From Schmidtea nova (Eukaryota), in contig CM097884.1 in the NCBI GenBank assembly GCA_044892505.1, positions 82,150,001-82,214,000 of the forward strand: a DNA stretch of 64,000 nt, in the 5' to 3' direction. Every line of letters begins with the position of its first letter. Position 1 is the stretch's first letter. The notes below the pieces were generated by a model, which was given only the letters and a program-made list of their open reading frames with translations, was not told the DNA's origin and searched no databases. Shown here in pieces: positions 3,090 to 48,400 of the stretch. The translations under genes were made by a program, and so were the position numbers.

Positions 3090-4406
3090 ATGAATATCAA
3101 ATCTTCAGAACATAAAGACTCGATTTCTCATCATGACAAACCGAAATCCATGAATGAATCTTTCTCGGAAATATTTGCAATCCAAAGATCCAGTTCGGCG
3201 TTTGCGGCTGGTTGGAACATCACGAACATCATCCAAGGAATCGGCATATTGGGAGTTCCGTACGCTATGTTGAAAGGCAGCTGGATTGGAGTGTTCATGA
3301 ATGTTTTCTCAGCGATAATTTGCTGTTCAACTGGCAAAATGATAATTAGTTGTTTATATGAACGGGTTGGTGTGTTGGATATTAGCATAAAAATACATGA
3401 AGATTATTCTGATATTGGAGAGAAGGTCTGGCCGAAATTCGGGAGAAAGTTCGTCATACTCATAAGCATCATTGAAATGTTTGGCGCTTCAACGCTTTAT
3501 GTGATTTTGTTGGGATCCTCGAGTTATACATTGTTTAAGAACATATTTCCCAACTTGACCGACCAACATTGGTTTATCATTTGTTGCTGTTTGGTATTGG
3601 CTCTTCTTTTTATCAAGCAAATGTCATATATTTCGTGGTTTTCTCTGCTAGCGGTCATCGGGCTATCGGGAACTATTATTTCAATAGTCATTTATTGTTT
3701 AACTAAATATCGAGATATTAAATTGAAAAATGTTCCAAGAATCTCAATTCAGGACTTACCAATTAGTATGGGGATAATCGTATTTTCCTATTGCGCCCAT
3801 CCGCTGTTGCCAGCAATAGAGGCCAGCATGAAAAAACCGGAACAATTCAATAAAATGATAAATGTTTCCTTTACTATTTCTTTAATTAGTAAAGTGATAT
3901 TCGGAATAATTCCTGTTCTGATTTTTGGGAGAAATACCTTGCAAATGATCACCAACAACTTTTCAAGAAACGACCAAGCTTTCTATGTGGCCACCAATAC
4001 CTTTGTATTAATAAACGTCTTCTTCAGTATGCCGTTGGTCATATTTATCCTATCGCAAAATATTGATGAAATCCTTCTTGTCAAGCATTTTCATCCCATA
4101 TTTTGGCCCCATGGCCAATTGCATTTTGCGTGGATGCTGATGAGTCGGTTGATAATTCTTCTCACTATATTACTCACTGGTCTAATAGTTCCGTACTTTG
4201 GTCTTGTGATGAGCTTCATCGGCTCGTTTACTGGAACGTGCTTGACATTCATTTTGCCCTGTTGGTTTAGTTTAGTACTGAAAAGGAAAGAGTTAAATGT
4301 CAGACAAAAATTATACAGAGTTTCAATTATAATTTGTGGAATGTTTTTCGGAATAACTGGAATGATTTTCGCAGCAAAAGAAATGATAACAATTTCTATG
4401 TTATGA
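3090..4406 (+). CDS. SLC32A1: Vesicular inhibitory amino-acid transporter-like protein (SLC32/VIAAT/unc-47 family, AAAP transporter), intronless, 438 aa
   Basis: AGWNITNIIQGIGILGVPYA, CCSTGKMIISCLYE, SMGIIVFSY and GSFTGTCLTFILP match SLC32 motifs; there are about 10-11 hydrophobic segments. It may be a paralogue rather than the orthologue. Confidence 0.8.
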   Translation: MNIKSSEHKDSISHHDKPKSMNESFSEIFAIQRSSSAFAAGWNITNIIQGIGILGVPYAMLKGSWIGVFMNVFSAIICCSTGKMIISCLYERVGVLDISIKIHEDYSDIGEKVWPKFGRKFVILISIIEMFGASTLYVILLGSSSYTLFKNIFPNLTDQHWFIICCCLVLALLFIKQMSYISWFSLLAVIGLSGTIISIVIYCLTKYRDIKLKNVPRISIQDLPISMGIIVFSYCAHPLLPAIEASMKKPEQFNKMINVSFTISLISKVIFGIIPVLIFGRNTLQMITNNFSRNDQAFYVATNTFVLINVFFSMPLVIFILSQNIDEILLVKHFHPIFWPHGQLHFAWMLMSRLIILLTILLTGLIVPYFGLVMSFIGSFTGTCLTFILPCWFSLVLKRKELNVRQKLYRVSIIICGMFFGITGMIFAAKEMITISML

Positions 4407-4805
4407 TTAAAATAATCTGTAAAATACATTTAATATTTTCTTTAGTTTTACTATTATTTTTTCATTCAATAATTTTCATATTTAATTTTTTGTAAGAATA
4501 TATATCAAAATCTTTTTTTTTGGTTGGTACACGATATTTCGGCACAGTGGTGTAACATCTATTTTTGTGCACGGAGCAAAGATTTAATTTGCGCCCTTCT
4601 TCGAAGCTTTTGTTTGAGCATCATTTTCTTAATTGCGATTAATGTTAAGATTTTAAGAATTACCATTAAAACAAGCTAACGTAAATATTTTAGCTATAAA
4701 AATTCAAAGTGAACTATACAGATTTAGTTAGATATTAACGGAATGAAATAAATTTGAAGTTTGAAATTTGAATTGAAATGTAGTCAAAAATGTAGTAGAC
4801 AGTAC

Positions 4806-6305
4806 CATGGGCGCCCGCAAAAAATTTTCTAAAGGGGGCAAAATATTTTGAGTAATGCTTAAATGTAGTTTTAATTTACTGTAGCGTATTTGTATCCTTA
4901 TTTGGATCTCTAATATTTGACGCGAAGTGTTCAGCATCTTGTTGAGACCCACGATGCCATGCTGAGCTGGTATGGTTTCGGGCACATTCATTAAAATCTT
5001 TGTACTTTGTACAAAGAGTAGTAATGAAGGCACCTTGAATTCCTCTTTTTAACCATTGAGTATACTTGGATAGCCAAGATTCACTGAAACAACGTTTTCC
5101 ACTTCTTGACACGTCGCCTTCAAAATCATATGACGGGGGAGGTTTGTATGAATCAGTTAGCAAATCAGTTAAGCTTAAAATCGATGGGAATCTTCGTAGT
5201 AGATTTTACATAGAGTCCAGTGTCATAAGTTAACCTAGTATCTCCAGTTTCAAGCTTGTCACGATCTGGTTCTGGTGATAGCGTTGCTGCTGCAGATGAA
5301 CAAGCAACAGCATCCGTTTTCCATGTTTTACCAACAAGAGTTAACGTTATTTCTTCAACATCTGGAGTCGATTGCTGTGACTGTCTGAGAGGTTTTAAAA
5401 GTTTCCAAATTTCCATGACACTTAAAAGTAACAAGAAAGACAAAGAAAAAGAATAAATAAGAAAGAACAAAAAAGAAAACTTAAACTAATACTAAAACCC
5501 AACCAGTCTCCATAGGCCTGGTAGAAATTAAAATAAATACAAGTTAAGAAACAAAAATCTTTTTAATAATATTACATAATTAACAAAATAAATTATGTTA
5601 ATTTACGCTATAACAAGCTTAGTAATTATAACTAATGGAAAATAACCACAATAATTAGATTATTAAAGGCTTACAAAATAACTTTAACCACTGTATGTGC
5701 AAACAACCTCATTAATTATTCAAACATAGGACTGTACAATAAAACATGTAGCTTATATAACGAAATTTATAACGAAATTAAAATAGATGATTTATATTTT
5801 TCTAATACTTTTTTGGCGCTGACGTGCGTGGAAGATGGAATTGACTAGGATTTTGATATCAGAATGTCCCACGCCTGTCGGCCAATTTTTGCTTTTGCGG
5901 TTGACAATAAGGAGAGCATGTAATATTGTTAATGTATGATAAGGTTAAGTAATACTCACGGCTCGATTCACAAGTTTATAAATATAAAGATTACAGAAGT
6001 ATTTGCTTAGATAAATACAATACGACGCGCGGAGTGAAACGGACGCGGCACTTGCTTCAGGCGGCAGAGAAAAAATGATCGGCCCGAACGATGAATGCAC
6101 GGTGGCCAAACGCTTGACGCTCATGTCACACCTGTGCGTCGCCAACCTGGCGATGATGTTGCTCCAGGCTGACAAAAGTTCTGTCGCTCCACCCTTTCTT
6201 TATGCTAAAATAAAGTGATTTAAAATAAAAGTAACATTATTTGACTATTTTCAATCAATCCAGAGGGGGCAAGTGCCCCCTTGTTTCCCACTGCGGGCGC
6301 CCATG
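4806..6305 (-). mobile_element. Internally deleted hAT DNA transposon (ZnF-TTF-type transposase remnant)
   Basis: Perfect 14-bp TIR CATGGGCGCCCGCA and 8-bp TSD GACAGTAC (4798-4805 and 6306-6313). ORF 4876-5163 contains KRCFSESWLSKY..WL...GAF...H..S.WH, which is ZnF-TTF-like. Confidence 0.85.
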
Positions 6306-6589
6306 GACAGTACGGTGTCTCTATAAAGATAAATGTAGCAAAGAATTGTAATAGAAGACATATTTTAATCTCTCTAAACAAATATTTTCTTTAATTTTTA
6401 GTAAACTCCAATTCTTTTTGTGAGCCCTTTAACACCTTGCGTCTTCAGCCTTTTCTCAATTCGCATATAGGCAGTTATGCCTGTGTTACACACTGTTACA
6501 GGCTGTGACAAAATATCGGGTACCAACCAAAAAATATGTGTGTAAATTGTTTTAAATCGATTTTGTTTATTATATTTTCCAGTGTTGTA

Positions 6590-6841
6590 AACTGCTTTCA
6601 GTTCAGAAAGAACCTCTTCTCTATTTTTTCCTTTCAGAAAGAGAAAGTGAATAACGCTTTGATATTGAATAGTTTTCAGAGGCATTTTTCGAATGTTCGC
6701 AAAAATATACTTAAACAATAATGGATTATTAAAACAAAATACATTTTCTTTATCTATATATGTTGAAGTTTAAATGTCTGTATCAATTTTCTTACTATTA
6801 TTATTTCTATATTAGTCTCACGACTTATTGGGCGCACCACG
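6590..6841 (-). mobile_element. Truncated mariner element (5' TIR plus transposase N-terminal HTH)
   Basis: The minus strand reads TA|CGTGGTGCGCCCAATAAGTCGTGAGACT, a mariner-like TIR. ATG at 6685 gives MPLKTIQYQSVIHFLFLKGKNREEVLSELKAVY, a Mos1-type HTH start. Confidence 0.7.
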
Positions 6842-7376
6842 TAAATTGAAATTGTTTTCGTGGATCATGGGTATCCATTTAAAATCGAAAACTATATTAT
6901 TGTTTATTGAGATGAACAAATAAATAATTTCAATGCATTGTATTGTTGATTTAAAAAGTGAATTGCTAAAAAAATTATTAAGTTGGTTTTCATTGTTTTG
7001 AATAAGGACACATGGAGTCAGATCATATTTACATCCCTATTAAAATTGTTAAAACTTTAAATATACAAATAGATCAGTGGTTTGCAAACTGTTACAAGTC
7101 GAGACCCACTATTAAAACCATAAGGTTCTTGCTACCCACCTTATAAAAAAACAAGGAAAAAACTAAAAACTTTTTAAATATATTTATTAAAAGTACATAT
7201 TTAAACATAATTTAGAGGATACATGAGATGAATGAGCTTGCCTTCTTTTTTTGGCAATAACATCTTCGACATCTACTTTGTTCTTGTGACAAATTAATTA
7301 AAAGCAAATTAAAATAAACACAAATATAATAATAAGGTAACAGTGCTAAGCCTTTCTCCGAAATGTTTATTTAAAT

Positions 7377-7578
7377 CAGCGGTTCCAAACTTTTCTGGTG
7401 CTGTGACCCCATGATAACATTTGCCAATTTGTGACGACCCAAACAATAAAATCAATAAGGTTGCACTTCAGTTACAGCATTTTTGCAGCCAAATATTATG
7501 ATAATTATGTTTTGGCGGCCCCTGGCAAACTGTCACGAGACCCCGTTGGGGTCGTGACCCCAAGGTTGGGAACCGCTG
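7377..7578. mobile_element. hAT-type MITE, 202 bp
   Basis: TIR CAGCGGTTCC(A/C)AAC and perfect 8-bp TSD ATTTAAAT (7369-7376 and 7579-7586). Confidence 0.9.
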
Positions 7579-8341
7579 ATTTAAATAAAATATTTCGATC
7601 TTAATAAGACCCTGATCACTTCAATACGAAATTCTTTCCAATTGACTTCCTAATTCTTGCTGAATATTTTCTTTCTCCTGATTTCTATTTAATATTAATT
7701 ATTAAAACAAAAATAGATCTTAATTTGTTTTAATAATTAATATTAAACCAGAATTCAGGAGAAAGAAAATATCCAGCAAGAACTAGGAAGTCAATTTGAA
7801 AGAATTTCGTATTTGAGTGATCAGGATCTTTTTAAGATTGAAATATTTTATCAAATAAACATTGATTAGAAAGGCTTAACACTGTTACCTTATTATTATA
7901 TTTTATAAACTGCTAACGACAAAACAATTCGTATTTATACTTTCAATTTGAGCCAGATTACCGTCATCTTCAAAATAGCTACGGATAAGATTTTAAAAAT
8001 TTAAATTCAAAGTAAGATTTTTCCTTATGAAATTCATAAAAAGAGCTTTTTATTGAAAGAATTATTTTAATTTTGTGAATAAAAGTAGTTTTTATTTTTT
8101 AATGTTTTAATTAAAAAATAAGCATTTTATTAATGAAAAGACTTTGATTCTCTATGATTTTTTAAAATATTTTTAAAGAAAGAACACTCTAATTATTAAA
8201 ATTAATAAATAAAAAATTTTTAATTAAAATTAATCTATCTCCAGAATAAATCTTAATTTGTTTTAATAATTAATATTAAACCAGAATTCAGGAGAAAGAA
8301 AATATCCAGAAAGATCTAGGAAGTCAATTGGAAAGAATTTC

Positions 8342-8391
8342 GTATTGGAGTGATCAGGATCTTTTTAAGATCGAAATATCTCATTTAATAC
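8342..8391 (+). ncRNA. Minimal type-I hammerhead-like motif, G3-C8 variant (sister copies 7817-7847 + and 7589-7619 -)
   Basis: GUGAUCA-G-[GAUC uuuuuaa GAUC]-GAAA-UAU-C. Helix II stays pairable in all three copies, helix III is the palindrome AUAU, and a bulged helix I is possible. Activity is untested. Confidence 0.55.
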
Positions 8392-8679
8392 ACATTGCAG
8401 AGAAAGGCTTAACACTGTTACCTTATTATTAAATTTTAATAAGATCTCCCAACGACAACAACAAATGATACGAGCAACCCGCTTAAGTCGGTTCGCGACC
8501 CACACTGAGAACAACTGGAATATATTAAAAGTGAATAGAAAGTTTTTTTTACTTTTTATATTATAAAATAATTATAAAATAAATTCGATTGTTTGTTTAA
8601 ATAGACCAAAAATCTTTTCCGTAATTTTTAAAATTTAAAACAATTTGTTTAAATAATTGAATAATTAATTGTATTAAAA

Positions 8680-10044
8680 ATGAACACTGATCAAGATTGC
8701 GTGATATGTTACTCTCCAATGGCCATTGAGTCAAGTATAACATTTTGCGACTGTCGACATTCATTTTGTCGATATTGTGTGGAAAAATGGCTGGTTACCA
8801 ATCCAACTTGCCCTTTGGATAGAAGGCCAGTTACGTCACTTGGTTTATTAAATGGGAAACGCGAAAATGTTTTAAAAATTAAAAATTTCATTGACTTTAT
8901 CGATTTAAAAAACTCCGTAAGGAAAATAAATTCCAAATTGTGCAGTTTACCAAAATTTATCAAACCAAATAAATTTTTGCCATTTTTTCAATCTCTAAAT
9001 CAAGAAATATCAGAAGAAGAAGTCAATGGCATTTTTAAAAATTTTCAAGATAAACACATTGCATTCCGTAAATCCACAAATTCGTTCACAATATTCTACA
9101 GTGGGTTTGTGATCCTTATTTCTAACATTTCCGACATAGTCAGTAAATATCAATTATCCACTAGTGCGACCCATCGCTTGTTAGCCTATGAACTTCAAAA
9201 ACAATTTTACACATCCGGCATTTCTCTCCGTAGAAAACTCGATATTTTCCTAATCGCAGAAATGTGCATTGAATCGTATCAGCACCAAAAAATCAATCAA
9301 ACTCAACTTTTTGATTATTTTCAGCAATTTGCAAAAAGGCTGGAAAAGTCGAGCGAACAATACGAATATTCTTTTTCATCATTCCCATGGTTGATAGAAC
9401 AACTTTTTGTCTTATTCAACAACTTCGCGGAAAAACACCTCAAGGATTTCTTCCCTAATGTTTCCATTGAATATAGATCTTTAGATTTTTCACGGTCAGA
9501 AATTTTCATTGAAAGTCGTGGAAGTGAAGAGAAAATTCAGAAAATCAAAGACATGATAGTAAAATGTACAGACGATGACATTGGCAATTTTATTCTCGAT
9601 GATAAGTTGCAAGTTGCCATTGACATGTTCCAGAAGCTTTTGGAGTCGATAGAAAAAATTTCGAAAAATTGTTTACTGTCATATTCTTTACCTTTGGAAC
9701 TAAAAATACTTGAATTTGACTTGGATTCGATAAAATATGGCTATTCAAGAATTTTTGAAACATTTAGAATACTCTCTTTAAAGTATCTACAACCCAATTT
9801 AAATACATTTATTAAAAAGTCTATAAATATATTAAATTGCATATTTAACCTAATAACAGCCTTTCAAGATTATATTTCAAATGTTGACAATGGACATTTT
9901 CTTCTTATAATTAAACTGTTAGAAAAGAATCTCACAACGGAATTGAAATCTATGATAAAGTTATTTGGCTTGGAAATTAATTGTAAAGTTTTAAAAATTT
10001 GTAATTTAATGGAAAAATTCTATTCTTTTCTTGAGAATTTTTGA
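8680..10044 (+). CDS. RING-finger protein (putative E3 ligase) with an unrecognised C-terminal region of about 400 aa, intronless, 454 aa
   Basis: N-terminal C-x2-C...C-x-H-x2-C-x2-C...CPLD RING, with the last ligand Asp as in PHRF1/SCAF11/TRAF-type RINGs. A 1365-nt open frame is unlikely by chance in such AT-rich DNA. Confidence 0.75.
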   Translation: MNTDQDCVICYSPMAIESSITFCDCRHSFCRYCVEKWLVTNPTCPLDRRPVTSLGLLNGKRENVLKIKNFIDFIDLKNSVRKINSKLCSLPKFIKPNKFLPFFQSLNQEISEEEVNGIFKNFQDKHIAFRKSTNSFTIFYSGFVILISNISDIVSKYQLSTSATHRLLAYELQKQFYTSGISLRRKLDIFLIAEMCIESYQHQKINQTQLFDYFQQFAKRLEKSSEQYEYSFSSFPWLIEQLFVLFNNFAEKHLKDFFPNVSIEYRSLDFSRSEIFIESRGSEEKIQKIKDMIVKCTDDDIGNFILDDKLQVAIDMFQKLLESIEKISKNCLLSYSLPLELKILEFDLDSIKYGYSRIFETFRILSLKYLQPNLNTFIKKSINILNCIFNLITAFQDYISNVDNGHFLLIIKLLEKNLTTELKSMIKLFGLEINCKVLKICNLMEKFYSFLENF

Positions 10045-10480
10045 TGGTCAATAATTTCTAAGAAATCAAAATGAAATTTTTATTTCAATCGGGAACGTTT
10101 AATAACAAAATAAATTATTTTAATTCCACTTATAATTAATCCTTTTAAAATGAAATTGTTTATTACTGTTTCGAAAATAGAATTATTTTCTTTATTTTAT
10201 TAACCTTGGCAATAGGTTGTAATTTTAGTTTATTAAAAGATTAATTTTATAAATTATGATTATTTTTGATTAAATTGTACTGATTGAAATTAAAATGGTT
10301 TTCTTTGAATAAAATAATTTATTACCCAAAGGATTAATAGTCAATTATTATTATTATTTACTTTCATAGAAGGCAAAATTATATAAATTAATATTTACAA
10401 CAAAATAACTGTTTACAATATCATATCTTTTGTTTTCACCTTTGACCTCTTCTTTTTAATTCAATAATTTTTATTAATTT

Positions 10481-11120
10481 TTGTAAAACTATAAATCAAA
10501 ATTTTTTTTGGTTGTTGGTATACGATATTTTGGCACATCAGTCAAAAACGTGAAAATCATACATTATTGATATGACCCATCAACAACTCAACACAAAACA
10601 TTAGTCAAAACCATCTTGTTGCCCGTCACAATTTATCGTTGGTAATGCAACAAATGAGTGGATTTTCTCAAACAGTGAGCGTTGAAAAGTCGAAACTATG
10701 ATTGATTGAACATTTCAGTGGGTTCAAAAGCGACCGATAGAAGGTTTTTTGCCCATTTTGAGTCCATTAATATAATCATTATGTTATTTACTTCAAATGT
10801 TTGTAAAACTATAAATCAAAATTTTTTTTGGTTGTTGGTATACGATATTTTGGCACATCAGTCAAAAACGTGAAAATCATACATTATTGATATGACCCAT
10901 CAACAACTCAACACAAAACATTAGTCAAAACCATCTTGTTGCCCGTCACAATTTATCGTTGGTAATGCAACAAATGAGTGGATTTTCTCAAACAGTGAGC
11001 GTTGAAAAGTCGAAACTATGATTGATTGAACATTTCAGTGGGTTCAAAAGCGACCGATAGAAGGTTTTTTGCCCATTTTGAGTCCATTAATATAATCATT
11101 ATGTTATTTACTTCAAATGT
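10481..11120. repeat. Exact tandem duplication of a 320-bp unit
   Basis: 10481-10800 and 10801-11120 are identical on visual comparison. Confidence 0.92.
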
Positions 11121-33408: not shown

Positions 33409-36400
33409 GAGTATTGATTTAGATCTATTAAATTTTAGATAATATTAAATTAAATTTTTAAATTAAATTAAATTAAATTTTAATAATATAACCTGAAATA
33501 AAGCAGGTGTAGTAGCAGACGAAAAATTGAAAGATTTTGAAATTCGAGTCTCAATATTACTCTTGCCCATATATTTTGTAATCATAACTGTTTTTGCAGT
33601 TCCTGGCTCTCCGATAAGTAAGACCGATTTTTCTTGTTTCGCTATATTATCCATAAGAAACTCCGTTCTCACGTTGTCTACGTTGGGTACGAGAATTTTC
33701 GAATACTCTGGAGTATAATCACGAGGATAAATATATTCATCCATGTAATGATTCCAATGGTCCCATTTCCCTATTTAGAAATTCAGCATGGAGGAGTAGT
33801 TTTAGAAAATATCTAACCTTCAGCATTTACTTTGTATTCAAAAATTGTAGAATCGGTTTCCACTTCTGGCAAATCTAAATTTATTTCATTGTCATTTCGT
33901 AAAAATTCTTCCATTTTCGCCCTTTCATTTAATTCAAGGAAAGCTCCCAAAGACCACATGAACGCAAACACGTACAATCTTTCAAGATGTTTATCTGGAA
34001 GACTTTCCTGGAAAATAATCCCTTGAAGAATGTCACAGGCTTGTCGTATAATAAATGCTTCCAAAATGACCATTTTCATAGTTAAGTTATTAACAACATA
34101 TTTCAATGTCTGTGGAAATGATTTTTCAAACAATGCATATAACTTTTCTCTTTCCGACATCGGTCTAGTCAAAAGCCATCCCTGTAGCATAAAAATGAAA
34201 CAAAAACACATATTATGTAATATAACCTTCAATATTGGACTCCAATTAAGTGCTGAACTAGACATAAACACCATTCCATTCCGTGAAACTGTTGCAGGAG
34301 ATGCATTGTCGATGTTATGTACCTCAAAGATGATTTTGCAGTTCGGACCCATGGGAATTCGATCCCCGTTGGCAAGAGTTAAAGTTTTATTATCATCTAA
34401 TACTGAATTCAAATTTTCGATCCAAATAGCGTCGACGGGACCATCTAAAATTAGCCAGCAATGTTCGCCTTTCTTTAATTTCAAAGTCCGTCTCCAAAGA
34501 GTGGAAAATATTCCATCTGTCCAGTCATTTGTTGCAACATCCAATTTACCAAACATTTCAGAAGCTAAAATTGCTTTCGGATTCATTCTCATTTCTCTAT
34601 GTGGATCACCACAGTCGGTGAGAGCCTTCATTAGGACAGTGATACAAATTGATTTCCCAGCTCCAGAAGGTCCAAGTGTCATCATGCCATGGCGAACGCA
34701 TTGTGTTTCATATAACTTAGTCAAATTAGAAATTTATTTGGTTATGTAAATTAATATACTTGAACGACTTTTAAAACCCACGGAGGATGATTTATCATTT
34801 TTAAACTGTCTACTTGTTTGCGTACAGAGCTTTCAAGCTCTGGATAACCAGCTTTGTCGAGAACAATTCCGGGAAACAGATCATTTATCAAAGACAAAAA
34901 TAGAGGTTCATCCTGGTCTACCAGTTTGCTCAAATTCATATCTCTTAAAACTCGCATTACAGTGCGGTCTTCTGAATCATTTGGCGCGACTCTTCTAGCT
35001 GAGCCGAGAGATCTCAATACGGATAAAATGTTCCTCAATCCAAAGTCATAATGAACCTGTCATTGAAATAAATTTTCAAGGAAAAATGAATAATTTTAAG
35101 TAAACCACTTGTAAATATTTATTTTTAATAACAACAGATTTTACAAAAAATAGTATCAATAAAATTATATATGCTTATTACAAAATAAATGATATTGTAG
35201 AGACTTTTTATCAAAATTATAATTATTATTTTAATAAGTCAACAACTAATAGAGATATCAATTACTGAATGATCTATCATTTATTTACTCAATTCTTAAC
35301 AACAGAAGAACAATTGAGATAATGTTTGGATTTCGTTGTTATACGATATTTCGCTTTACGGACAATTCTTTAGGGACGTATCTAGACTGCATGACGAGGT
35401 ATTTGTGAAATCACTTTTTCTAATTTCAAAAAAGCACTCGAAATTANNNNNNNNNNNNNNNNNNNNNNNNNNNNNNNNNNNNNNNNNNNNNNNNNNNNNN
35501 NNNNNNNNNNNNNNNNNNNNNNNNNNNNNNNNNNNNNNNNNNNNNNNNNNNNNNNNNNNNNNNNNNNNNNNNNNNNNNNNNCAAAAATTTTTTTTTATAA
35601 ACAATAACACAATATTTCGGCACAGCCTTTATCAAGTGTGTATTTGTTTAAATATTTAGTAATAATCAGTATTAATTATGTTCAAATTGTATCAACATTC
35701 AATTTTTTAAAAAAAATTCTTCAAATAATTTTCAAGTTGATTTTTTTATGTAAAAATATATTTTAAAAAACAAAAATTTTAATTTTTTTATCAAAATTGA
35801 ACAAAATAATTTTTTTTCAATACCAGTTTTAAAAAAATGAAAAAAAACACATTAAAAATCCAAAACACAATTCGAAAAATGCAACATCCAGTTACTTAAA
35901 CACATTCAAAATATCCGTAGAAGATATTATAAAAAATACCTCACAAGTTACTCATTCTCATTAATTACTCAAACTTAATTAATTACTCATTAATTACTTT
36001 TGTAATAATATTAAAGTGAGAGATCTATAAAAATTACTTTGAAAATTTTATATCTGAAGAATATATTTAAAAAAATTGAATGTTAATACAATTTGAAGAT
36101 TATTATTATTGATTAATTTGTTAAAATATTTCGAATTTTTTATTTTTTATTTATTATCCTGATTGCTGGCCTGAAGAAGAGTGATATTCGGACGAAATAT
36201 ATAGCGTTATGTTGAATATACTTAGCTGGCGTTTCTCATTTATTAAATCATTGCCATATTTTTTTGATTAATTATTANNNNNNNNNNNNNNNNNNNNNNN
36301 NNNNNNNNNNNNNNNNNNNNNNNNNNNNNNNNNNNNNNNNNNNNNNNNNNNNNNNNNNNNNNNNNNNNNNNNNNNNNNNNNNNNNNNNNNNNNNNNNNNN

Positions 36401-39400
36401 NNNNNNNNNNNNNNNNNNNNNNNNNNNNNNNNNNNNNNNNNNNNNNNNNNNNNNNNNNNNNNNNNNNNNNNCTAGCATTCATACTTTTATTGTGATATAT
36501 AAAATTTCATTGTTTGTCCGTCCATCACAACCCATATTTAAATTTATATAAATTTATTATAAAAAATTATTATAAATTTATATAATTTTAAAAAAATTGG
36601 ACCGTCATTTAATCGTAACCTATTTAAAAATTCTGATAATTATTTTATCCTCAATATCAACATCAATGTTTTCAAATTTTTAGAGCCCAAGGTACCGTTG
36701 AAAATATACTTTCATTATCAAAGATACAATATCAAATTTATCACTTTTTACGACTCGTATTTTGTATGTTTAATTGGAAACTAAAAGAATCACTACAGCT
36801 TTAACTCTATGTTACACAATACGTGAAACACGTATGAAGATCTTTTCAATTTGTTTCTATTCATTCTTTATGCTTTCACTGTCACCTCATTTTATTCAGT
36901 GCCCAAATTGAATCCAATGTTACTGTCACCCTCTGCATCTTCACAGCACCCACTTTAGGAACCACATCATTAAGAGGCTTATGTTATTTACATTAAAAAT
37001 AGCTTAAAATTCGGAATAAAAATTGCAAAAGACTTACTTGTTTTGTTAACTGTTCTTCGCACAATTTGTAAAGAACAAAGAATTTTCTCGCCAAAATTAT
37101 ATTTTCAATAAATCCACAAGCGGCCAATTTGACACGAATAATTATTTGTCGATCCGGCACCATCATTGCTACAGACCTAAAATTAATTTTTAAATTTTCT
37201 GGCAATTCTTGCCGACCAGCATATCCAGGATTCTAATTTATTCAGAATATTTGAGATTTTCGGACAAAAATTTAATAAATTTAACCATTGTCAAAAACAA
37301 TCCGAATTCCGGATTCATTTCCACCATATCACCATCACTGAAAATAAATTGGGATTTCCCTTCCTTTTTACACTGTAATATAATTGCTATTTGCTGAGCG
37401 GCTACCGATAATACTGGCAACTCTATTCGGTTGAATTCATCAAAACACCCCCAGGATCCCGACTGCGCCAATCCTTTGAATATCCTTCCCAAACCTCGGA
37501 AATCCATTTGATCAGAACAGTTGAAAACTACGACGTATTTTCCCAAACATCTACCCATGTCCTAAAAAATGACTCATTAAAAAAGATAATGAACAGTTCA
37601 TAGTTACTTTTGTGGTTTCCGTTTTACCGGTTCCTGCCGGACCAGCTGGTGCTGCCCCTAAACTCATACTCAGCGCTTGAGCAATAGTAATATAGCATCG
37701 ATCTGTCAAAGGGGTTATGACCAAACGTTCAGTACAACCAAGAAATTCATTTTGATACTCAAAGTCTACATCAGTAATTGAGATGACACATTTGTCGACA
37801 TCTTCCATAAAATAAAATCTAGTTTGCTTGGTCCATTCAAAATCATTTTGAGATTTTACGTTCAATTTACACTGAACAACATAAAAAGATTAAATCACAA
37901 TAAAAGTTTTAAAAATTATTTCAAGATCAAGAAAAGTTCAAAAGATGGATAAATGTATCTCATGTGCGCTAACCAAAAGTAGCAAGATGCAATATTTGTC
38001 AATTTCTACGTCATATTTGCTCTATAAAAAACTTACTAATTTTTGATGAAACGTAGATCATGCTTGATACTTCAAGACGATATGGTCATTGGTAAGACGC
38101 AGATACTCGATCTGCTAAAATCTTTAAATCTTCACTAAAAACTGTTGTTTAATGTTTGATAGCGAACCATCTCAAGACACGCAAAACAATACATTCTTAA
38201 TGAATTAATAATATGCATAATGCTATTCGCCAAAGACTTAAAGACTAAGAATCGTCGTCAGTCAATCTAAAAAACCAAGCCATTAAAGATTGATAATGTA
38301 CAAATACACGCATAAGAACATTTTAGTTAATAAACTAACATTTAGTTAATAAACTTCATTTCATGGAATATACTTTACATTTCTCCAACCAACTATGATA
38401 TTATTTATATATAATCTTCGTCGCTTGATCTTCTTTCGATTTTATTTATTTTTAATACTAAAAAATGGCAGTACCGAAAATTTGCATTAAAAAAAGAAAA
38501 TATTTTTGATCTATTGTCTAAAAATTGAAACTTAATTAATTTATATTAAAATTAAATTAATTCAATTCAAATTCAATCTTTTTTTACATGTACCTTGATT
38601 TTGAAATTCCTTTAATTGATTGTTCAAATGTGCGTAACTTTTTATTATAGAAAATGTATGTTGAATATCTATGCAGTGATTGATGTTTTTGATAATCTGC
38701 TTTATTTTTCTATTTTATGTATGTATTTTAATTATGTATACACTGTGTTTCAATCAGTAGAATTAGCTATAATATACGTGAGTGTGACACATCCAAGGTT
38801 ATTAGTAAACATTTTTTAATTTGATGTATTAGCCATTTTAAAATGGCTTTTAGGTAATTTAGATGTCTGAGGATAACTTTTAAGGCTTTTATTTTGATTT
38901 CGTAATGATACGAGAAAAGCTTTAAAAAATTATCTATGTTCTACAATTTTATTTTTAATTACTTTGTAGGAAATTATGACTTTTTCAAAGAAATTTTTTG
39001 AATAATTCACAATCAAAATAAATTAAAATCATTTTTAATTAAAATTTTTTATGAAACTAATCTTCGAGGCTTGCTACCACCTTTCCAGCCTTTTTGTATT
39101 TGACCATATTTTTTTATAATTATAAATTATATTTCAGATCGAATATTTGAGTATTCCAAGTGAACTTCTCAAATGAAACTAGCTATGGTTATTTTCAATG
39201 AAATTTATTATCTTGCATTGTCAATATCTGAAGTCATAATCACCATATAATAGTTTTATAAATATATATTATTTCCGAAATAACGATTTTCGAACATTAT
39301 TTCGGGTTTCAAATTATGTGTAAACGATAGACGTAGATGAAATATCTGAAAGGCTAAGAACATGATAAATATTTGATAATATGATGACATAGGTTTAGGA

Positions 39401-42400: not shown

Positions 42401-45400
42401 AAAAACATACAATACAATTTAAAGAAGCTGCTGTGAATTATGCTTTGAATTCATCCATTTCAAAAGCAGCTGAACATTATGGCTGTCACATTAACCTCAT
42501 CAAGCGATGGAAAAAACAAAAAGATCTTCTGCAATCGATTAGGAATAAAAATGCAAAAGTAGTCAAGAGAATTCGACTCATTCAATGGCCAGCATTGGAG
42601 GATCATTTGAAGAAATGGGTTATTCAGCAGAGAAAAAATGGATTTCCAGTTTCTGGAACATCAATTTTGCGAGAAGATCAAGCACAGACAATACAAATGA
42701 AAATTAACAACTTCAAAGGATCTTCATATTGATTTTCAGTTTCATGAAAAGAAATAGTCTCACAGTTCGGGCTGTTAGTTCAGTTGGCCAGAATCTTCCA
42801 GATGATTGGGAAATTAAAATTAAAAGTTTTGTAAATTTCATTACACGGCACAAAAATAATTACTCGCTTCAGCATATTGGCAATATGGATAAAGTACCTG
42901 TTACTTTTGACATGCCTTCAAAGTTTACAATTGATCAGGTAGGATCATCTGACATTCGCATCACAACAACTGGAGCTGAAAAATCGGTTCTCTGTCGCTC
43001 TTTGTGTAACTGCAGATGGTGGTAAATTACCAGCTTATGGGATTTTTCGACGAAAAACAATTTCATCAGGTTCCGTTCCATCAAATGTAATCGTATCAGC
43101 TAATGAAAAATCTCAAATGACTTCAACGGAAACTCTGCTGTGGCATGAAAATGTTTGGATGAAAAGAAAAATGGCGCTTTTCAATAGAAAATCACTTATC
43201 ATGATCGATTCTGCCCCTGGTCATCGCACTGATGAAGTCAAATCTAAATTTACTGCAGCTGGGACACTGATAGGTATGATTCCAGGTGGTTTAACAAAAA
43301 AATTACAAGTTCTAGATATAAGTGTAAATAAATCATTTAAAACTCATCTCCGACGTCATTGGGAGAATTGGATGGTAAAAGGATATCAAGAATACACAAA
43401 GTCTGGAAATATGAAGCGAGCTTCCTACGAAGAGATTTGTCATTGGATATCTGAGGCATGGAAGGCAGTACCAGTTTATGCAATAAAAAATGGTTTCAGA
43501 TCGACAACCATTGATTTTTATACAGAAGACTTGGATGATATTAATGAGCCAATGGTTGAGGAATTGTTGGATGATAAAGATGAAGAAGAAAAAGACGATA
43601 ATGATATTCGTGATCATGATTTCTTGATGGAGAAAACTTTGCTAGTGAAGAGGAAGTAGAATTTTTTGAATAAAATTTTTTAATACTTTTTATATTTTCT
43701 GAGTATAAATATTTTTACCGTTTTTTTTCTAAGGTTCCACTTGATACTAAGGTACCATTCTTTACTAAGGTACTTTTGGGCTCAAAAAAAAACTTTTAAA
43801 GTTTACTAAGGTTTTACCTTATAACCAAAAAACAGGGTACTTTTTAAATCAAACGAAAATGTAGAATATTTGAAAGATAAGTAAAAGTTTAAAAAAATAC
43901 TTTTAATTATTATCATATAGAAACTCAGAAATTAAAATGAATTATTGCAACAATTTTATTAGTTTCAGATATTTTCTAAGACAAAAAATTTCCATTGCGT
44001 ACGATTTTCCGTAAGTGCCAAAAAATTGATAAAATAATTAAAGGTGAACAAAATTAAAGATGTGTCTGGTTATTTATTTTCAGTCCGTTTTTTGAATGAC
44101 TTCTCGTGCTCCTATAACTACAAATAACCAAAACCCAACAAAATAAATTTTATTGAATTCCTTAATTTACAAACGTTAAATCAATACACTTTCAAATTTC
44201 TATAAAACAATCTGTACTCTTCTTTATTCCAGCGATAGGGATAATTTTACCAAGGGTAGATTTCTCTTTCTGATACGATTTATATTTGATAATATTATAT
44301 TTCTGATAATCGCACTTTTCACACTTACCCAACATGTCGTACTCCTTAATAATTTTTGCTTCGACCAAACTGGTGATTTACTGTCATTTTGCTATTCCTT
44401 TTATAGTAATTTTATTGCGTCAACATATCAATTAAATTGCAAGAATAGGGACATAATATAATTATCCTTTTTATGATTGGATTTTTTCAGAATTGAAATG
44501 ATTGTTGTCTCTAATAATTCAATCATTGCGGCCTGCGACTCCGAAAATTAGATTTTATGTCGGTTTTGACGGGTTTTCCATTTGTTAGGGTTTTTCATTA
44601 GTTCTAGTTTCCCATGTACTCGGGTTTCCCATAACTAGGGTTTTCTACATAACTAATAAATTATTCATTGATTTTTAATTAATTTTTATTTATCGAAAAT
44701 CTTTTACTAGGGACCCCCAATTGAGATTTTATTATCACACTCGTACTTGTCTCTCCATTTGCCATCCGTACATACCAATTGACTCTTAACTATATCAATT
44801 TTTAATTTTTTTTAATTTTTAATTAATTTTTATACTTATTTATAAATTGTGAATTTAACACTGTTCAGATTTTTATTGAGTTGCTAGATCCACGGTGCAC
44901 TCTTGCGTCATGTTACACCACTTTATACGAATTTCAACAGATGTTAATAATGATATTATTGCTGTATTAACTATTAAATGTATGATGTAGCATGTATGAT
45001 ACTTATTTCAAACTACTTAAGTCATTTTGGTAAATAACAATTTTTGGTGTAAATAACGATAGAAATTATGTATTAGAGTGCTGTTGATAATTTATACATG
45101 TGCATTGTAATTTATAAATATTTCCCAATTAATGAAACGCAAAAAAATTAATATCTAAATTAATTTTAGTATTATATTGACTTTTAGTTCATTATTAACC
45201 AATTTGAATTTGAGGTACATTTGTACCCCCAGCAGTTCCCCATCCATTTTCAAGGTTTCGGTACTCGAAGGTTAAAAAATAAATATCTATGAAAAAATTT
45301 CAATTAAAATTGAAATTTACTTATTCTGAAATTCTTGCAAATCTGATCCAATTTTGTCCATGTCGACATTTTTCCAAATGATTTCATAATATCCACTGAC

Positions 45401-48400
45401 GGTTTTGTTAACTTCATTATACAAACCGTAGAGACGTTGAAGAAGCTCTAGTTCTTTTCCGATTTGTAAAAAGGACGGATACGAAGATGTTGGCAGACCA
45501 AACAAAATTTCACCTTTTGCATAGCTTTCTAATTTTCGAAGCAAGTTATCAAATCTATTTTTAAATAGAATTTGTTTGTCCAAAGCTTCTACTGGTGGCA
45601 AACCCGGCTTCATTGGTCCTCTCTGAAAATAAATACGATTCAAATATGCACTTCATTCTTAAAAGAAACTTCATTGTAATCGTTAATAAAATCTTCAATA
45701 TCAATTTTCAGTTGACTGATGTTGTTGAGTAAGCCTTCTTTATAACTTCCTTGTATAGCTAAGATATGGTCAATAGCTTGAAATTCATTTTCCTTCATTC
45801 TGTTATAATTGCACCTGACCGCTTCTACTTGATCTCCTGTTGACTTAGGATACGGAATATCGAATTTACTCATTGTTTGACTGGCATACTTAATGAAACA
45901 CAATCATAGGGAAATGTTATAATCTACAATTAAAAAAAACCCTATGTTTACAGTTTACCATACACTACATTTAATCACAGCTTTCACTTTTTAACTCAAT
46001 TGATTCTCATTTCCTATAATAAATTAACCAAGATTAGTAAATTAATATTTGATAAAGGCGTTGTCCAAAATCGTGGTTATCCCTATGAATGTTATTGATC
46101 TAATTTCGTCAAAAACAAAACAAATATTTCTCTTATATTTCGAATATAAAATTTTATACGATTTCTATCTTATTAAACGAATTACAAAATTAAAGGTAAA
46201 TAAAGCGTAAATATCTCAAGGTCACATTGTGATTAAATTTTATTAAATATATTAGATGTCAAAATTACGATCTTCCAAATGTTTTGTTGATACAGGTCTC
46301 TCATAATCTGATAATATTAATATCAATAATTTCCATAAGACTATAGATCAAATTACCTTTATACAATTACACATATTTTGATCTATAATCTTATGGAAAT
46401 TATTGATATTAATATTAAAAAAAAAGATAAAAGGTGAAACAAAAAGATAATTATGATATGATAATATTAGATTTCTAAATTATTATTGATAAATGTAAAA
46501 TGACTTTCAAGCAGATGTAAACAACTTAGAAATTGTAAAGACTAAATTATATATTTAAACAACATTTTTTACAGAATGTTTATTACCAGAAACCAGTTAG
46601 ATATGTAATTAGCAGGATTAACGAGGTATTATGAAAGGGTTAATAATTGTGGATAACATTTTAAATTTTAAAAATGAGAATTTTGTCGAAAGTTTAAAAA
46701 ACATTGTATTTATCAGTATTAATTAGATACAAATTTAAACCAAAAAATGTCTGTCTAACACAGTGGTTCTTAACTTTTATAGTGGACAGCCCTCCCTTGA
46801 ATCTGAAAATAAACTCTCACACCCCCTTGAAAAATGTGTTTCTATTTTTTATTTAGGAAAATGCATTTATTGCAAAACAATTTATTTATTGTATAAACAA
46901 ATGAAAACAATTACAAATTTAGAAATTTGTCTCACACCCCTAGAAATGCTGTTTTGGACCCCCGGGGTGCACGCACCCAAGGTTAAGAACCACTGGTCTA
47001 AAATCAATTAAAATTTAAAAATGTAAAAATTACGTCAAATGTGTTAGATTTACTTATCAAGTAATGTACGTTTTTAAAAAAATGTTCTTGCTCCCTGTCG
47101 TATATTATTATGCACGAGAAAGAAAATAATAGTAAAAAACATTTGAATTTTAAAACTCACTCCGGATAAGGGTTCTTTTGAAAACAATATAACTTGTGAT
47201 AAAACGAATATAATTAACCTCAGCTGTCATTATGTCGTAATCCATTTTGATATCTATTTGTCTTATATAAGCCAGAGTATCCATTATAAATGCTATGTCA
47301 TCTAGGTTAGTTATATTCTTCGATAAATTCCTTTCTATTTCATCAAGCTGGGTCTGAATAGCTTCAATTCTGCCCACAAATCTTTCAGTACAACCAGTTA
47401 CATAAACCTTAATCAAATAATAAGTTACGTTTACAATATAAAATGATAATAAATACTTAAAATTTAAGTTAACATACTCACTACAAAGGACGAGTACTCG
47501 TCCTTCAGAATACGTAAATAAATATCCAGGACGAGCGTACTCGTAGTATATTTAAATGTGCTAAATAGCCGTTAGTAAGACTTAATGGCTACAGACTCAT
47601 CGAATCAGTAAATAAAGGTTGAAATAAATAAAAAGACAAAATTTAATAATAAAATTAAAAAATTACTGCACTCACATGCATAGAAATACCTTAAACATAA
47701 ATGGCAATATGAATTACATCACATAATTTTGGTTTGGCAAAAATATAATGACAAAATCTAATAACTTATGTTTGTGACTGAAATTAGAGCAGAGTAAACC
47801 ATAAAGCGAAAATATTCAGCTATTTTAAATCATAAAGTTTTGGTAGAAAAGTGTAAAATAATTTTAACAGATCTTAAACAAATAAAATTATTACAATTTA
47901 AGAATCCCTATTGTTATCCCCGTTGATTCATTAACACAAAACTTTATAATAACACAAGATGTATTGTTAAAACTATCCTTTGAGTCTTCAAGTGTAATCT
48001 ATTTTTAAAAAAATATATTTTCCCATCATCTGTAGATTTCGAAAATCCAATAATTATTTTTTTTCGAACAGGTATTATTAAATTATTTTATACCATTAAA
48101 ATGGTAGTTTATTTTCATTTTTTCAGACAATAAATAAAATTTCTTTCAATTCAACGAAAGGTTTCAACACCGTCTTTATCAGAGTCTTCAAATGGAATTA
48201 GCACTTGAAAAAAAGACAGTACCGGAAATTTGTGTTGAATTTGAGTAAAAGGGATTTTTAATCTGTTATCTAAAAAAGAAAATAAACAAAATTTCAAAGA
48301 TTAGAAAAATTAAAGATTTTAATAATAATTCATTAATACATTGGTTTCCAACCTTTTTGTACCGACGCCCCCCTTTTAAAAAAAAAGTTGGTGCGCCCCC

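What the first reader, a model, noticed from the sequence alone, without database searches (positions are those of the whole stretch)
7325..8445. Tandem-plus-inverted array of G3-C8 hammerhead-like motifs: candidate retrozyme or Penelope-LTR unit inside a hAT shell
Seen: three copies of a unit of about 190 bp each contain GUGAUCA-G-helixII-GAAA-UAU-H (8350-8380 +, 7817-7847 +, 7619-7589 -). Helix II differs between copies (GAUC/GAUC, GAUC/GAUU, GGUC/GAUC) but stays pairable. The two plus copies are 533 nt apart, and the cassette lies between hAT-like ends. Established: the hammerhead core is CUGANGA..GAAA with a 3-8 base pair, and Penelope-like elements carry minimal hammerheads with a palindromic helix III in tandem or inverted LTRs that can act as dimers. 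Inference: a rare G3-C8 variant that could release a monomer of about 533 nt, possibly circular, and may have been moved by a DNA transposon.
Basis: partly seen in the sequence, partly recalled or inferred. Interest (0 to 1): 0.8.

Follow-up and report, generated by a model that had tools for sequence, protein, structure and literature searches.

The report
Penelope-type repeat trio with hammerhead-like motif
Three diverged copies of a 194-bp repeat in a planarian intergenic region are laid out like the terminal repeats of a Penelope-like retroelement, and each carries a hammerhead-ribozyme-like motif with a swapped core base pair; this may be a new natural ribozyme variant, but cleavage and conservation are untested.

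Summary
The motif is present in all three copies at the stated places (7619-7589 -, 7817-7847 +, 8350-8380 +). The copies are repeats of one 194-bp unit (Y), 89-92% alike, so they count as one event.

The layout is: inverted Y (7322-7717) | direct Y (7718-7905) | 339 bp non-coding AT-rich DNA | direct Y (8245-8438). This is the published typical Penelope-like element (PLE) insert: two direct pseudo-LTRs plus one head-to-head inverted pseudo-LTR of about 190-220 bp.

The motif has the published features of PLE minimal hammerheads:
- an unpaired base after A9;
- G10.1-C11.1;
- a 6-bp helix II;
- a short helix I;
- a palindromic AUAU in place of helix III.

Its core pair is G3-C8 instead of C3-G8. 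A motif this complete appeared 3 times in 556 Mb of composition-matched random sequence, never with G3-C8.

The "hAT shell" is not there. The outer inverted ends are the Y tails themselves. The only hAT-type feature is a 202-bp MITE nested in the inverted copy.

Three copies cannot show conservation or covariation. No further copies were reachable, and there is no Rfam hammerhead hit.

Best reading (about 0.5): an old, non-autonomous PLE-type insert carrying a G3-C8 hammerhead variant. Main rival (about 0.3): a foldback MITE plus a solo arm, with a chance motif.

The parts
7322..7376 (-). Outer (tail) piece of the inverted Y copy. Its last 8 nt (7369-7376, ATTTAAAT) are one copy of the duplication made by the nested MITE.
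   Evidence: Pairs with 7853-7903 (90%) and with 8384-8436 (89%) as an inverted repeat. Aligned. nhmmer hit 7390-7322, E=2e-9.
7377..7578 (.). Nested 202-bp MITE with 14-nt terminal inverted repeats (7377-7390 / 7565-7578). It is flanked by the 8-bp target-site duplication ATTTAAAT (7369-7376 and 7579-7586), the duplication length of hAT-type elements. It is a later insertion into the inverted Y copy, about 3-10 nt past that copy's putative cleavage site.
   Evidence: Sequence read. Terminal repeats (I7). The 8-mer direct repeat abuts the ends. The site is single-copy in the other two Y copies.
7579..7717 (-). Inner (head) piece of the inverted Y copy. On the minus strand it carries the hammerhead-like motif 7619-7589: G3 at 7619, helix II GGUCUU/AAGAUC, H17 = U at 7589.
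   Evidence: (I2).
7715..7720 (.). Head-to-head junction of the inverted and direct Y copies. The symmetry axis lies between 7717 and 7718 inside the palindrome AGATCT, with no spacer.
   Evidence: sequence. (I2: 5 nt between the arms; I8: 100% complementary 24-nt arms).
7718..7905 (+). Upstream direct Y copy (pseudo-LTR-like) with motif 7817-7847. Layout: G3 7817, C8 7822, bulged G 7824, helix II 7825-7830/7834-7839 (closing pair G.U here), GAAA 7840-7843, UA 7844-7845, U16.1 7846, H17 = U 7847. The putative cut is 7847/7848.
   Evidence: (D1).
7906..8244 (+). 339-bp body between the direct Y copies. It is 19% G+C, has no ORF of 25 aa or more, and has no repeat relatives in the window beyond low-complexity AT matches.
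8245..8438 (+). Downstream direct Y copy with the best-formed motif, 8350-8380. Layout: G3 8350, C8 8355, bulged G 8357, helix II 8358-8363/8367-8372 with G10.1-C11.1, GAAA 8373-8376, UA 8377-8378, U16.1 8379, C17 8380. The putative cut is 8380/8381. Homology to the other direct copy starts within about 6 nt of the palindrome axis of the first pair.
   Evidence: (D1, 92%).
8439..8464 (+). Possible short 3' extension ('tail') of the downstream copy. It includes an AC-rich stretch (8450-8464) that matches 7914-7927 after the upstream direct copy and is absent after the inverted copy. The evidence is weak.
   Evidence: Local alignment score reached by 6 of 500 shuffles, at nearly the same offset from the repeat end. 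Alignment.

Best explanation
The region 7322-8438 (perhaps to 8464) is one old, non-coding insertion of the Penelope-like-element (PLE) type in a planarian (Schmidtea-like) genome. It consists of two direct ~194-bp pseudo-LTR-like repeats (Y) around a 339-bp AT-rich body. A third Y copy is joined head to head, in inverted orientation, to the upstream one. A hAT-type MITE later landed in the inverted copy.

Each Y carries, about 55 nt from its outer end, a minimal hammerhead-type motif of the kind found in PLE pseudo-LTRs, but with the core pair written G3-C8 instead of C3-G8.

Inferred mechanism: in the source family, transcripts running through direct Y copies could pair two motifs through their self-complementary AUAU (positions 15.1-16.1). 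That would build a dimeric hammerhead, cut after position 17, and release a unit of 533 nt at this locus.

What is shown: the layout, the motif, and its rarity by chance.

What is inferred: descent from a PLE-mobilised family, any cleavage, and any circular RNA.

This particular copy is probably inert. Its three repeats differ by 8-11%, and one is interrupted.
For: Layout:
- Direct repeats 7712-7905 / 8245-8438 are 92% identical.
- The inverted copy pairs with both, and the axis lies inside AGATCT with no spacer.
- The published 'typical Penelope structure' is two direct pLTRs of about 190-220 bp plus an adjacent inverted pLTR, head to head, with palindromes at the junction, an optional ~31-bp tail and 0-10-bp duplications. 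Unrelated DNA can sit between the pLTRs (PMC3846280; PMC8557442).
- The Perere10 PLE clade is reported from Schmidtea mediterranea. The window is Schmidtea-like: its slc32a-2 ORF is 90% identical to the S. mediterranea protein.

Motif:
- It has the traits listed for PLE minimal hammerheads: a nucleotide between 9 and 10.1, G10.1-C11.1, a 6-8-bp helix II, a 2-5-bp helix I, and a palindromic 15.2-16.2 with no loop 3 (PMC4209133). These are seen here.
- Motif pairs 100-700 bp apart on opposite strands are reported in Schistosoma.

Rarity:
- The full descriptor occurs 0.00035 times per 64 kb in 556 Mb of composition-matched sequence, and never with G3-C8.

Plausibility of G3-C8:
- C3G/G8C partly restores cleavage, also in a PLE hammerhead (PMC8495972).
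- Natural U3-A8 covariants exist.
- A swap needs two complementary transversions at exactly the paired positions. Random decay of a canonical core would rarely give this (inference).

Single event:
- All three pairwise identities are alike (0.89-0.91).
- There is no other copy in the remaining 62 kb, so two independent hits 339 bp apart would be a coincidence.
Against: - No reverse transcriptase or GIY-YIG ORF is in the window, and no family copy next to one could be fetched. The tie to PLEs therefore rests on layout and motif alone.
- No Rfam hammerhead model matches, even at E<=10. By inference these models are not built for minimal, helix-III-less motifs.
- A natural G3-C8 hammerhead was not found in the held literature.
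- Core conservation is not significant (P about 0.15). Helix changes are one-sided G.U changes, and the shuffle control is null (349/500).
- MFE folds have ordinary z-scores and pair core bases G5-U7 with the cut-site bases.
- Helix I is only 2-3 bp in the hammerhead register, and the dimer helix III would be four A-U pairs.
- No significant target-site duplication bounds the whole unit.
- The palindrome arms end at the same base, so a clear 'tail' is lacking. The AC-rich extension is marginal.
- GATC is enriched throughout Y (5 in copy B against 0.55 expected). TGATCA and the GATC stems could therefore belong to a palindromic sequence theme unrelated to catalysis.
- The motif was found by eye in a scan of unknown size, which weakens the chance estimate.
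Confidence: 0.5

Rival explanations
1. Foldback or long-TIR MITE plus a solo arm. Under this reading 7322-7903 is a non-autonomous DNA transposon whose whole length is an inverted repeat (about 190-bp arms). 8245-8438 is the remnant of a second copy that lost its left arm by a deletion starting at the palindrome centre. The hammerhead likeness is a chance by-product of GATC-rich palindromic sequence. Read-through RNA would simply form a long hairpin, a possible small-RNA source.
For: - The palindrome is near-perfect and spacer-less, with both arms ending at the same base.
- Sub-threshold matches to long-hairpin, MITE-like plant MIR models reflect the hairpin.
- GATC is enriched across the unit.
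- The window holds several DNA transposons and MITEs.
- A 6-bp direct repeat, ATAAAC, lies within 1-2 nt of the palindrome's ends.
- No conservation signal is seen for the core.
Against: - The flanking 6-mer is not significant (P about 0.19) and overlaps sequence that copy B also shares.
- The ends match no transposase-encoding element or other repeat in the window.
- A half element that starts within about 6 nt of the axis, in direct orientation, 339 bp away, while 62 kb hold no other copy, needs extra coincidences.
- The complete minimal-hammerhead feature set is expected only 0.00035 times per 64 kb.
Confidence: 0.3
2. Unit-length, retrozyme-like short retroelement inserted twice. Under this reading Y (about 195-200 nt) is itself the full mobile unit, copied by a PLE enzyme from multimeric or circular RNA. 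The palindrome is one head-to-head dimer insertion and copy B is a separate monomer insertion. The 339 bp between them is ordinary host DNA.
For: - Copy B begins at the same point as the palindrome arms.
- The 10 nt after B's end (8439-8448) resemble the first 9 nt of the unit (8245-8253 and 7712-7720), as expected if slightly more than one unit was copied from a tandem or circular template (read).
- Candidate 6-bp duplications exist for each part separately: ATAAAC and ATCTCC.
- Animal retrozymes are proposed to be non-autonomous derivatives of PLE pseudo-LTRs (bioRxiv 10.64898/2026.07.22.740005).
Against: - Both 6-mers are at chance level (P about 0.2).
- Two independent insertions fall 339 bp apart with none elsewhere in 62 kb.
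- There is no head-to-tail array and no canonical type I hammerhead, which define non-LTR retrozymes.
- The 10-nt terminal redundancy is short and AT-rich.
Confidence: 0.12
3. Local, non-mobile rearrangement. Under this reading an inverted duplication and a nearby direct duplication of ordinary intergenic DNA produced the three copies. No element family exists, and the motif is chance.
For: No other copy was found in the window, in viral contigs or in metagenome contigs.
Against: - The collections searched do not hold planarian genomes, so this absence says little.
- The three copies share sharply defined ends.
- The motif's rarity by chance applies here as well.
Confidence: 0.05

Closest known systems
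Minimal hammerhead motifs (min-HHR) in the pseudo-LTRs of Penelope-like elements, especially flatworm PLEs (Cervera & de la Pena 2014, PMC4209133)
   Same: - Order of parts: core box, one unpaired base, long helix II closed by G10.1-C11.1, GAAA, self-complementary 15.1-16.1 tetrad with no loop 3, then UH.
- Short helix I.
- Location inside ~200-bp terminal repeats.
- Motif pairs on opposite strands a few hundred bp apart.
- A core 3-8 pair that can covary (U3-A8 in Schistosoma Cercyon elements).
   Different: - The 3-8 pair here is G-C, which I did not find reported for any natural family.
- No PLE ORF is nearby.
- Only three copies are known, so the family-wide covariation that supports the published motifs is missing.
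Typical Penelope insertion architecture (Arkhipova et al. 2013, PMC3846280; Craig et al. 2021, PMC8557442)
   Same: - Two direct repeats plus one adjacent inverted repeat.
- Head-to-head junction with a palindrome.
- Repeat length about 190-220 bp.
- Unrelated or non-coding DNA can lie between the direct repeats.
   Different: - The body is only 339 bp and non-coding.
- No significant target-site duplication is present.
- The 'tail' is doubtful.
- The inverted and direct copies are truncated at exactly the same point.
Non-LTR retrozymes of animals (Cervera & de la Pena 2020, PMC7229834)
   Same: - Short, AT-rich, non-coding units with a type I-like hammerhead.
- Units proposed to yield monomeric linear and circular RNA.
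- Proposed to derive from PLE pseudo-LTRs.
   Different: - Retrozymes are head-to-tail arrays of 150-450-bp units with canonical hammerheads (6-bp helix I, 4-bp helix II, loop-loop contacts).
- Here the direct copies are separated by unrelated DNA, and the motif is of the minimal kind.
Laboratory C3G/G8C double mutants of hammerheads (Martick & Scott 2006 as cited in PMC11167929 and PMC8495972)
   Same: Same swapped core pair. It is known to keep partial activity, including in a PLE hammerhead.
   Different: Those are engineered. This would be a natural occurrence, and it is untested.
Foldback-type or long-TIR MITEs
   Same: Spacer-less palindrome of about 380 bp (without the nested MITE), AT-rich and non-coding.
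   Different: - A direct solo arm lies nearby.
- There is no significant duplication and no matching autonomous partner.
- A rare ribozyme-like motif is present.

Membership tests
Hammerhead ribozyme (any type) | Conserved core: C3 U4 G5 A6 N7 G8 A9 ... G12 A13 A14, A15.1-U16.1, H17 | tested here: inconclusive
   U4, G5, A6, A9, G12-A14, A15.1, U16.1 and H17 are present in all three copies. Positions 3 and 8 are G and C instead of C and G, so they can still pair. The swapped pair is known only from engineered mutants with partial activity. U3-A8 is the only natural covariant I found.
Hammerhead ribozyme (any type) | Match to a curated covariance model (Rfam Hammerhead families) | tested here: not met
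   No hammerhead family matched at gathering score over the window or at E<=10 over 7200-8600. By inference these models are not built for minimal motifs without helix III.
Hammerhead ribozyme (any type) | Self-cleavage after position 17 | not testable with these tools
   No biochemical or RNA-end data were available.
Hammerhead ribozyme (any type) | Helices supported by covariation across family members | tested here: inconclusive
   There are only three sequences. Helix II is 6 bp and 100% paired, with two one-sided G.U changes. One helix I pair shows GC/GU/AU. 349 of 500 shuffles do as well.
PLE minimal hammerhead (min-HHR) | Unpaired nucleotide between A9 and 10.1 | tested here: met
   A G is present at 8357, 7824 and 7612(-) in all three copies. 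Criterion from PMC4209133.
PLE minimal hammerhead (min-HHR) | G10.1-C11.1 closing pair and a long helix II (6-8 bp) | tested here: met
   Helix II is 6 bp in all copies. It closes with G-C in two copies and G.U in the 7817 copy.
PLE minimal hammerhead (min-HHR) | Palindromic 15.2-16.2 with no loop 3, allowing a dimeric helix III | tested here: met
   GAAA-UA-U gives the self-complementary AUAU in all three copies. Whether a four A-U pair helix forms is not tested.
PLE minimal hammerhead (min-HHR) | Short helix I (2-5 bp) next to the cut site | tested here: met
   2-3 pairs form in the hammerhead register (columns 13-15 with 47-49). Longer outer helices in the MFE folds use a shifted register.
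PLE minimal hammerhead (min-HHR) | Located in the pseudo-LTR of an element encoding RT plus GIY-YIG, or homologous to one | tested here: not met
   No RT or GIY-YIG domain was found in any ORF of 75 aa or more in the window. Homology to a resident PLE could not be tested, because no planarian genome was reachable.
Penelope-like element insertion (structure) | Two direct pLTRs plus an adjacent inverted pLTR, head to head, with a palindromic junction | tested here: met
   Criterion from PMC3846280 and PMC8557442.
Penelope-like element insertion (structure) | 30-40-bp 'tail' at one end; variable target-site duplication | tested here: inconclusive
   A possible ~26-nt extension after the direct copies only (6 of 500 shuffles). 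Flanking 6-mers are at chance level.
Non-LTR retrozyme (animals) | Head-to-tail tandem array of 150-450-bp units, each with a canonical type I hammerhead | tested here: not met
   The direct copies are separated by 339 bp of unrelated DNA. Tandem Repeats Finder reports no array here. The motif is of the minimal kind. Criterion from PMC7229834.
LTR retrozyme (plants) | Type III hammerheads in ~350-bp LTRs, PBS and PPT, 4-bp duplication, G+C above 55% | tested here: not met
   The motif has type I topology. Repeats are 194 bp, G+C is 19-26%, and no 4-bp duplication abuts the ends. PBS and PPT were not searched. Criterion.
hAT-family element or hAT MITE (for the outer 'shell') | Short terminal inverted repeats flanked by an 8-bp target-site duplication | tested here: not met
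   The best direct repeat around 7322 / 8438 is a 5-mer (P 0.51), and around 7322 / 8464 a 6-mer (P 0.2). The nested MITE 7377-7578 does meet the criterion.

The most novel reading that the evidence does not exclude
Planarians harbour a family of Penelope-derived non-autonomous elements whose pseudo-LTR hammerheads use a natural G3-C8 core pair. This would be a second natural covariant of the catalytic 3-8 pair, after U3-A8, maintained by selection for pairing and able to release unit-length (here 533-nt) RNAs.
Probability: 0.35. Interest if true: 0.65.

Novelty: new variant of a known kind. Interest (0 to 1): 0.5.

Why it matters
The C3-G8 pair holds the general-acid nucleotide of the hammerhead in place. 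Only U3-A8 has been seen to replace it in nature. G3-C8 is known from engineered mutants with reduced activity.

A natural family with G3-C8, in the very context where minimal hammerheads live (Penelope-type terminal repeats of flatworms), would have three consequences:
- It would add evolutionary proof of that pair.
- It would widen the descriptors used to census ribozymes in animal genomes.
- It would give a handle on poorly annotated Penelope-derived repeats in planarian genomes.

If instead the motif is chance, the locus is an ordinary nest of decayed repeats 240 bp upstream of a RING-finger gene.

Tried and rejected
Searches and tests that gave nothing or were inconclusive:
- Rfam at gathering score over the window, and at E<=10 over 7200-8600. 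No hammerhead matched. Only sub-threshold long-hairpin plant MIR models matched, reflecting the palindrome.
- More copies in the window by blastn with word size 7, by a descriptor scan and by an nhmmer profile of the three copies. None were found.
- Copies elsewhere: one pattern scan of viral contigs and two of metagenome contigs. No hits. These collections are not expected to hold planarian DNA.
- Exact look-ups of two window proteins, to reach the source genome. Neither is on record. The word search placed the window near Schmidtea mediterranea but returned no genomic contigs of it, so no family census was possible.
- ORF-based retrieval. The element has no ORF above 57 aa, so protein tools cannot reach its copies.
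- Target-site duplications for the palindrome, for copy B and for the whole unit. Only 5-6-mers at chance level were found.
- Core-versus-flank variability and pair counts. Underpowered with three copies. In one search I placed the bracket for position 8 one column too far (column 22 instead of 21), so that row is meaningless. G3 and C8 are invariant.
- Thermodynamic folds of 61-nt and 141-nt segments. z-scores ran from -1.45 to +0.85, which is not informative.
- The opposite strand of the motif. It has CUGAUCA next to the hairpin but no helix II or GAAA in register, so I rejected it by inspection.

Steps deliberately not taken:
- I built no covariance model, because there was no further sequence to search with it.
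- I did not test a version with the canonical pair written in, because that would be an altered sequence of the element.
Full report
**Source and setting**

- The window is AT-rich (about 30% G+C) and eukaryotic.
- Its intron-less ORF 3090-4406 is an amino-acid transporter (Pfam Aa_trans). It is 90% identical over its full length to Schmidtea mediterranea slc32a-2. The DNA therefore comes from a planarian close to, but probably not identical with, that species.
- The finding lies in the intergenic stretch between this gene and a RING-finger ORF at 8680-10044. It ends about 240 bp upstream of the RING-finger ORF.

**What is in the sequence**

Repeat analysis resolves 7322-8438 into three copies of one 194-bp unit, called Y here.

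- Two copies are direct: 7712-7905 and 8245-8438, 92% identical, 533 nt apart.
- The third is inverted and forms a spacer-less palindrome with the first direct copy. 7585-7715 pairs with 7721-7851, and 7322-7372 pairs with 7853-7903. The axis falls inside AGATCT at 7717/7718.
- The inverted copy is split by a 202-bp MITE (7377-7578). This MITE has 14-nt terminal inverted repeats and an 8-bp duplication, ATTTAAAT, abutting both ends. The duplicated site is single-copy in the other two Y copies. I compared the two pieces of the interrupted copy separately and did not join them.
- Between the direct copies lie 339 bp of 19% G+C DNA with no ORF of 25 aa or more and no repeat relatives.
- Pairwise identities of the three copies are 0.89-0.91.

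**The motif**

The 30-nt string occurs three times and nowhere else in the window. It always sits at the same position of Y, so it is one inherited feature, not three independent ones.

In standard hammerhead numbering the best copy (8350-8380) reads as follows:

- G3 U4 G5 A6 U7 C8 A9;
- an unpaired G;
- a 6-bp helix II (GAUCUU, loop UUU, AAGAUC) closed by G10.1-C11.1;
- G12 A13 A14 A15.1;
- U15.2 A16.2 U16.1;
- C17.

The other two copies differ by one-sided changes that leave G.U pairs in helix II, and by a loop change. Next to the cut site, 2-3 pairs of helix I can form. One of these pairs is G-C, G.U and A-U in the three copies.

**Is it more than chance?**

- A loose descriptor (any Watson-Crick 3-8 pair, stem of 4 or more) is expected 0.9 times per 64-kb window, so that alone means nothing.
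- The full set of features present here occurred 3 times in 556 Mb of first-order Markov sequence with the window's composition. That is 0.00035 per window, and it never occurred with G3-C8 or C3-G8.
- Caveats: real repeats are richer in palindromes than Markov sequence; GATC is strongly enriched in Y; the motif was picked by eye from a scan of unknown size.
- With only three copies, conservation cannot be shown. 0 of 11 core columns vary against 19 of 120 elsewhere (P about 0.15), and the pair-count controls are null.
- Rfam's hammerhead models do not match, even at E<=10. The folds are thermodynamically ordinary.

**What the anatomy resembles**

I expected a foldback MITE with a chance motif. 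The literature changed the balance.

- Arkhipova et al. (PMC3846280) describe the typical Penelope insert as an internal region bounded by two direct pseudo-LTRs of about 190-220 bp. An adjacent inverted pseudo-LTR sits head to head, with palindromes at the inverted junction, an optional ~31-bp tail and duplications of 0-10 bp. They also report unrelated DNA carried between such repeats, and they place a flatworm PLE clade in Schmidtea.
- Craig et al. (PMC8557442) give the same scheme.
- Cervera and de la Pena (PMC4209133) found minimal hammerheads in PLE pseudo-LTRs. Their traits are exactly those seen here: an extra base after A9, G10.1-C11.1, a long helix II, a short helix I, and a palindromic 15.2-16.2 without loop 3. 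They also report motif pairs 100-700 bp apart on opposite strands in Schistosoma, and a natural U3-A8 core covariant with about 1,300 hits.
- Perreault et al. (PMC3088659) also report natural U3-A8.
- The engineered C3G/G8C double mutant partly restores cleavage, including in a PLE hammerhead. The same study found that cleavage was not needed for insertion in vitro (PMC11167929; PMC8495972).
- I found no report of a natural G3-C8 family in the held library. This is a limited negative.

**Weighing the readings**

The PLE-type reading explains five things with one event:

- the inverted-plus-direct layout;
- the repeat length;
- the head-to-head junction;
- the equal divergence of the three copies;
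- a rare motif at the expected kind of place.

It also explains why copy B's homology stops at the palindrome axis: that is where the upstream copies are truncated.

Against it:

- No PLE protein gene is in the window.
- Nothing significant marks the insertion boundaries.
- The tail is doubtful.
- The family could not be sampled. The element has no ORF for protein-based retrieval, the source genome is not on record, and pattern scans found nothing.

The foldback-MITE reading remains reasonable. Its cost is a solo arm starting at the axis only 339 bp away while 62 kb hold no other copy, plus a 1-in-thousands motif coincidence.

A third reading treats Y as a unit-length, retrozyme-like element inserted twice. 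It draws on the 10 nt after copy B, which resemble the start of the unit, and on separate 6-bp repeats. Both are at chance level.

- The motif, its copies, the spacing and the helix II variants are confirmed.
- The 'hAT shell' is not. The outer inverted ends are the Y tails, and the only hAT-type signature is the nested MITE, which arrived later and interrupts one copy.
- Strict retrozyme membership fails the tandem-array and canonical-hammerhead criteria.
- The Penelope-LTR idea is the best-supported reading, at moderate confidence.
- Cleavage, dimer action and a 533-nt circle remain inference.

**State of this copy**

The three repeats differ by 8-11%. One has G.U at the closing pair of helix II. 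One is split a few bases past its putative cut site. The locus looks old and inert whatever its origin.

- In one search the bracket for position 8 was set one column off, so that single row should be ignored.
- A profile HMM of the three copies was built for the window search and remains in /scratch.
- They were not used.
- The N runs at 35447-35581 and 36278-36471 were left untouched.

Noticed in passing
window 7377-7578 and 48332-48928: A 202-bp MITE with an 8-bp duplication (ATTTAAAT) is nested in the inverted Y copy. A second element with similar ends lies at 48.3-48.9 kb: 23-nt inverted arms, 87% complementary, 551 nt apart.
   Followed up: partly
window 51444-56436: hAT transposon remnant on the minus strand. 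It has a transposase ORF at 52913-54337 (Dimer_Tnp_hAT, E=2e-26), a separate zf-BED ORF at 54539-54799, and inverted repeats at 51444-51554 / 56329-56436. The nested MITE's ends were not compared with the ends of this element.
   Followed up: partly
window 42433-43659: pogo/Tc5-like transposase pieces on the plus strand, split over separate ORFs: HTH_Tnp_Tc5 at 42433-42732 and DDE_1 at 43117-43659. This looks like a decayed copy.
   Followed up: no
window 13220-61528 (minus strand): Exons of one dynein heavy chain gene span most of the window, from the C-terminal domain at 13.2-14.1 kb to N-terminal region 1 at 61 kb. The hAT and pogo-like remnants lie within its span, presumably in introns.
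   Followed up: no
window 10476-11120: Tandem duplication of a 320-bp unit, 2.0 copies at 99% identity, just downstream of the RING-finger ORF. It appears young.
   Followed up: no
window 8245-8448: GATC occurs 5 times in copy B (0.55 expected) and at the palindrome axis (AGATCT). It occurs 0 times in the 339-bp body. The window as a whole has the expected number. The element may have a palindromic sequence theme independent of any ribozyme.
   Followed up: partly
window 3090-4406: The slc32a-2-like ORF is only 90% identical to the Schmidtea mediterranea protein. The source is therefore likely a sister species or a divergent haplotype rather than the reference strain.
   Followed up: no
window 4728-6718 (minus strand): A run of five ORFs of 76-106 aa with no Pfam match lies between the transporter gene and the element. 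Their nature is unknown.
   Followed up: no
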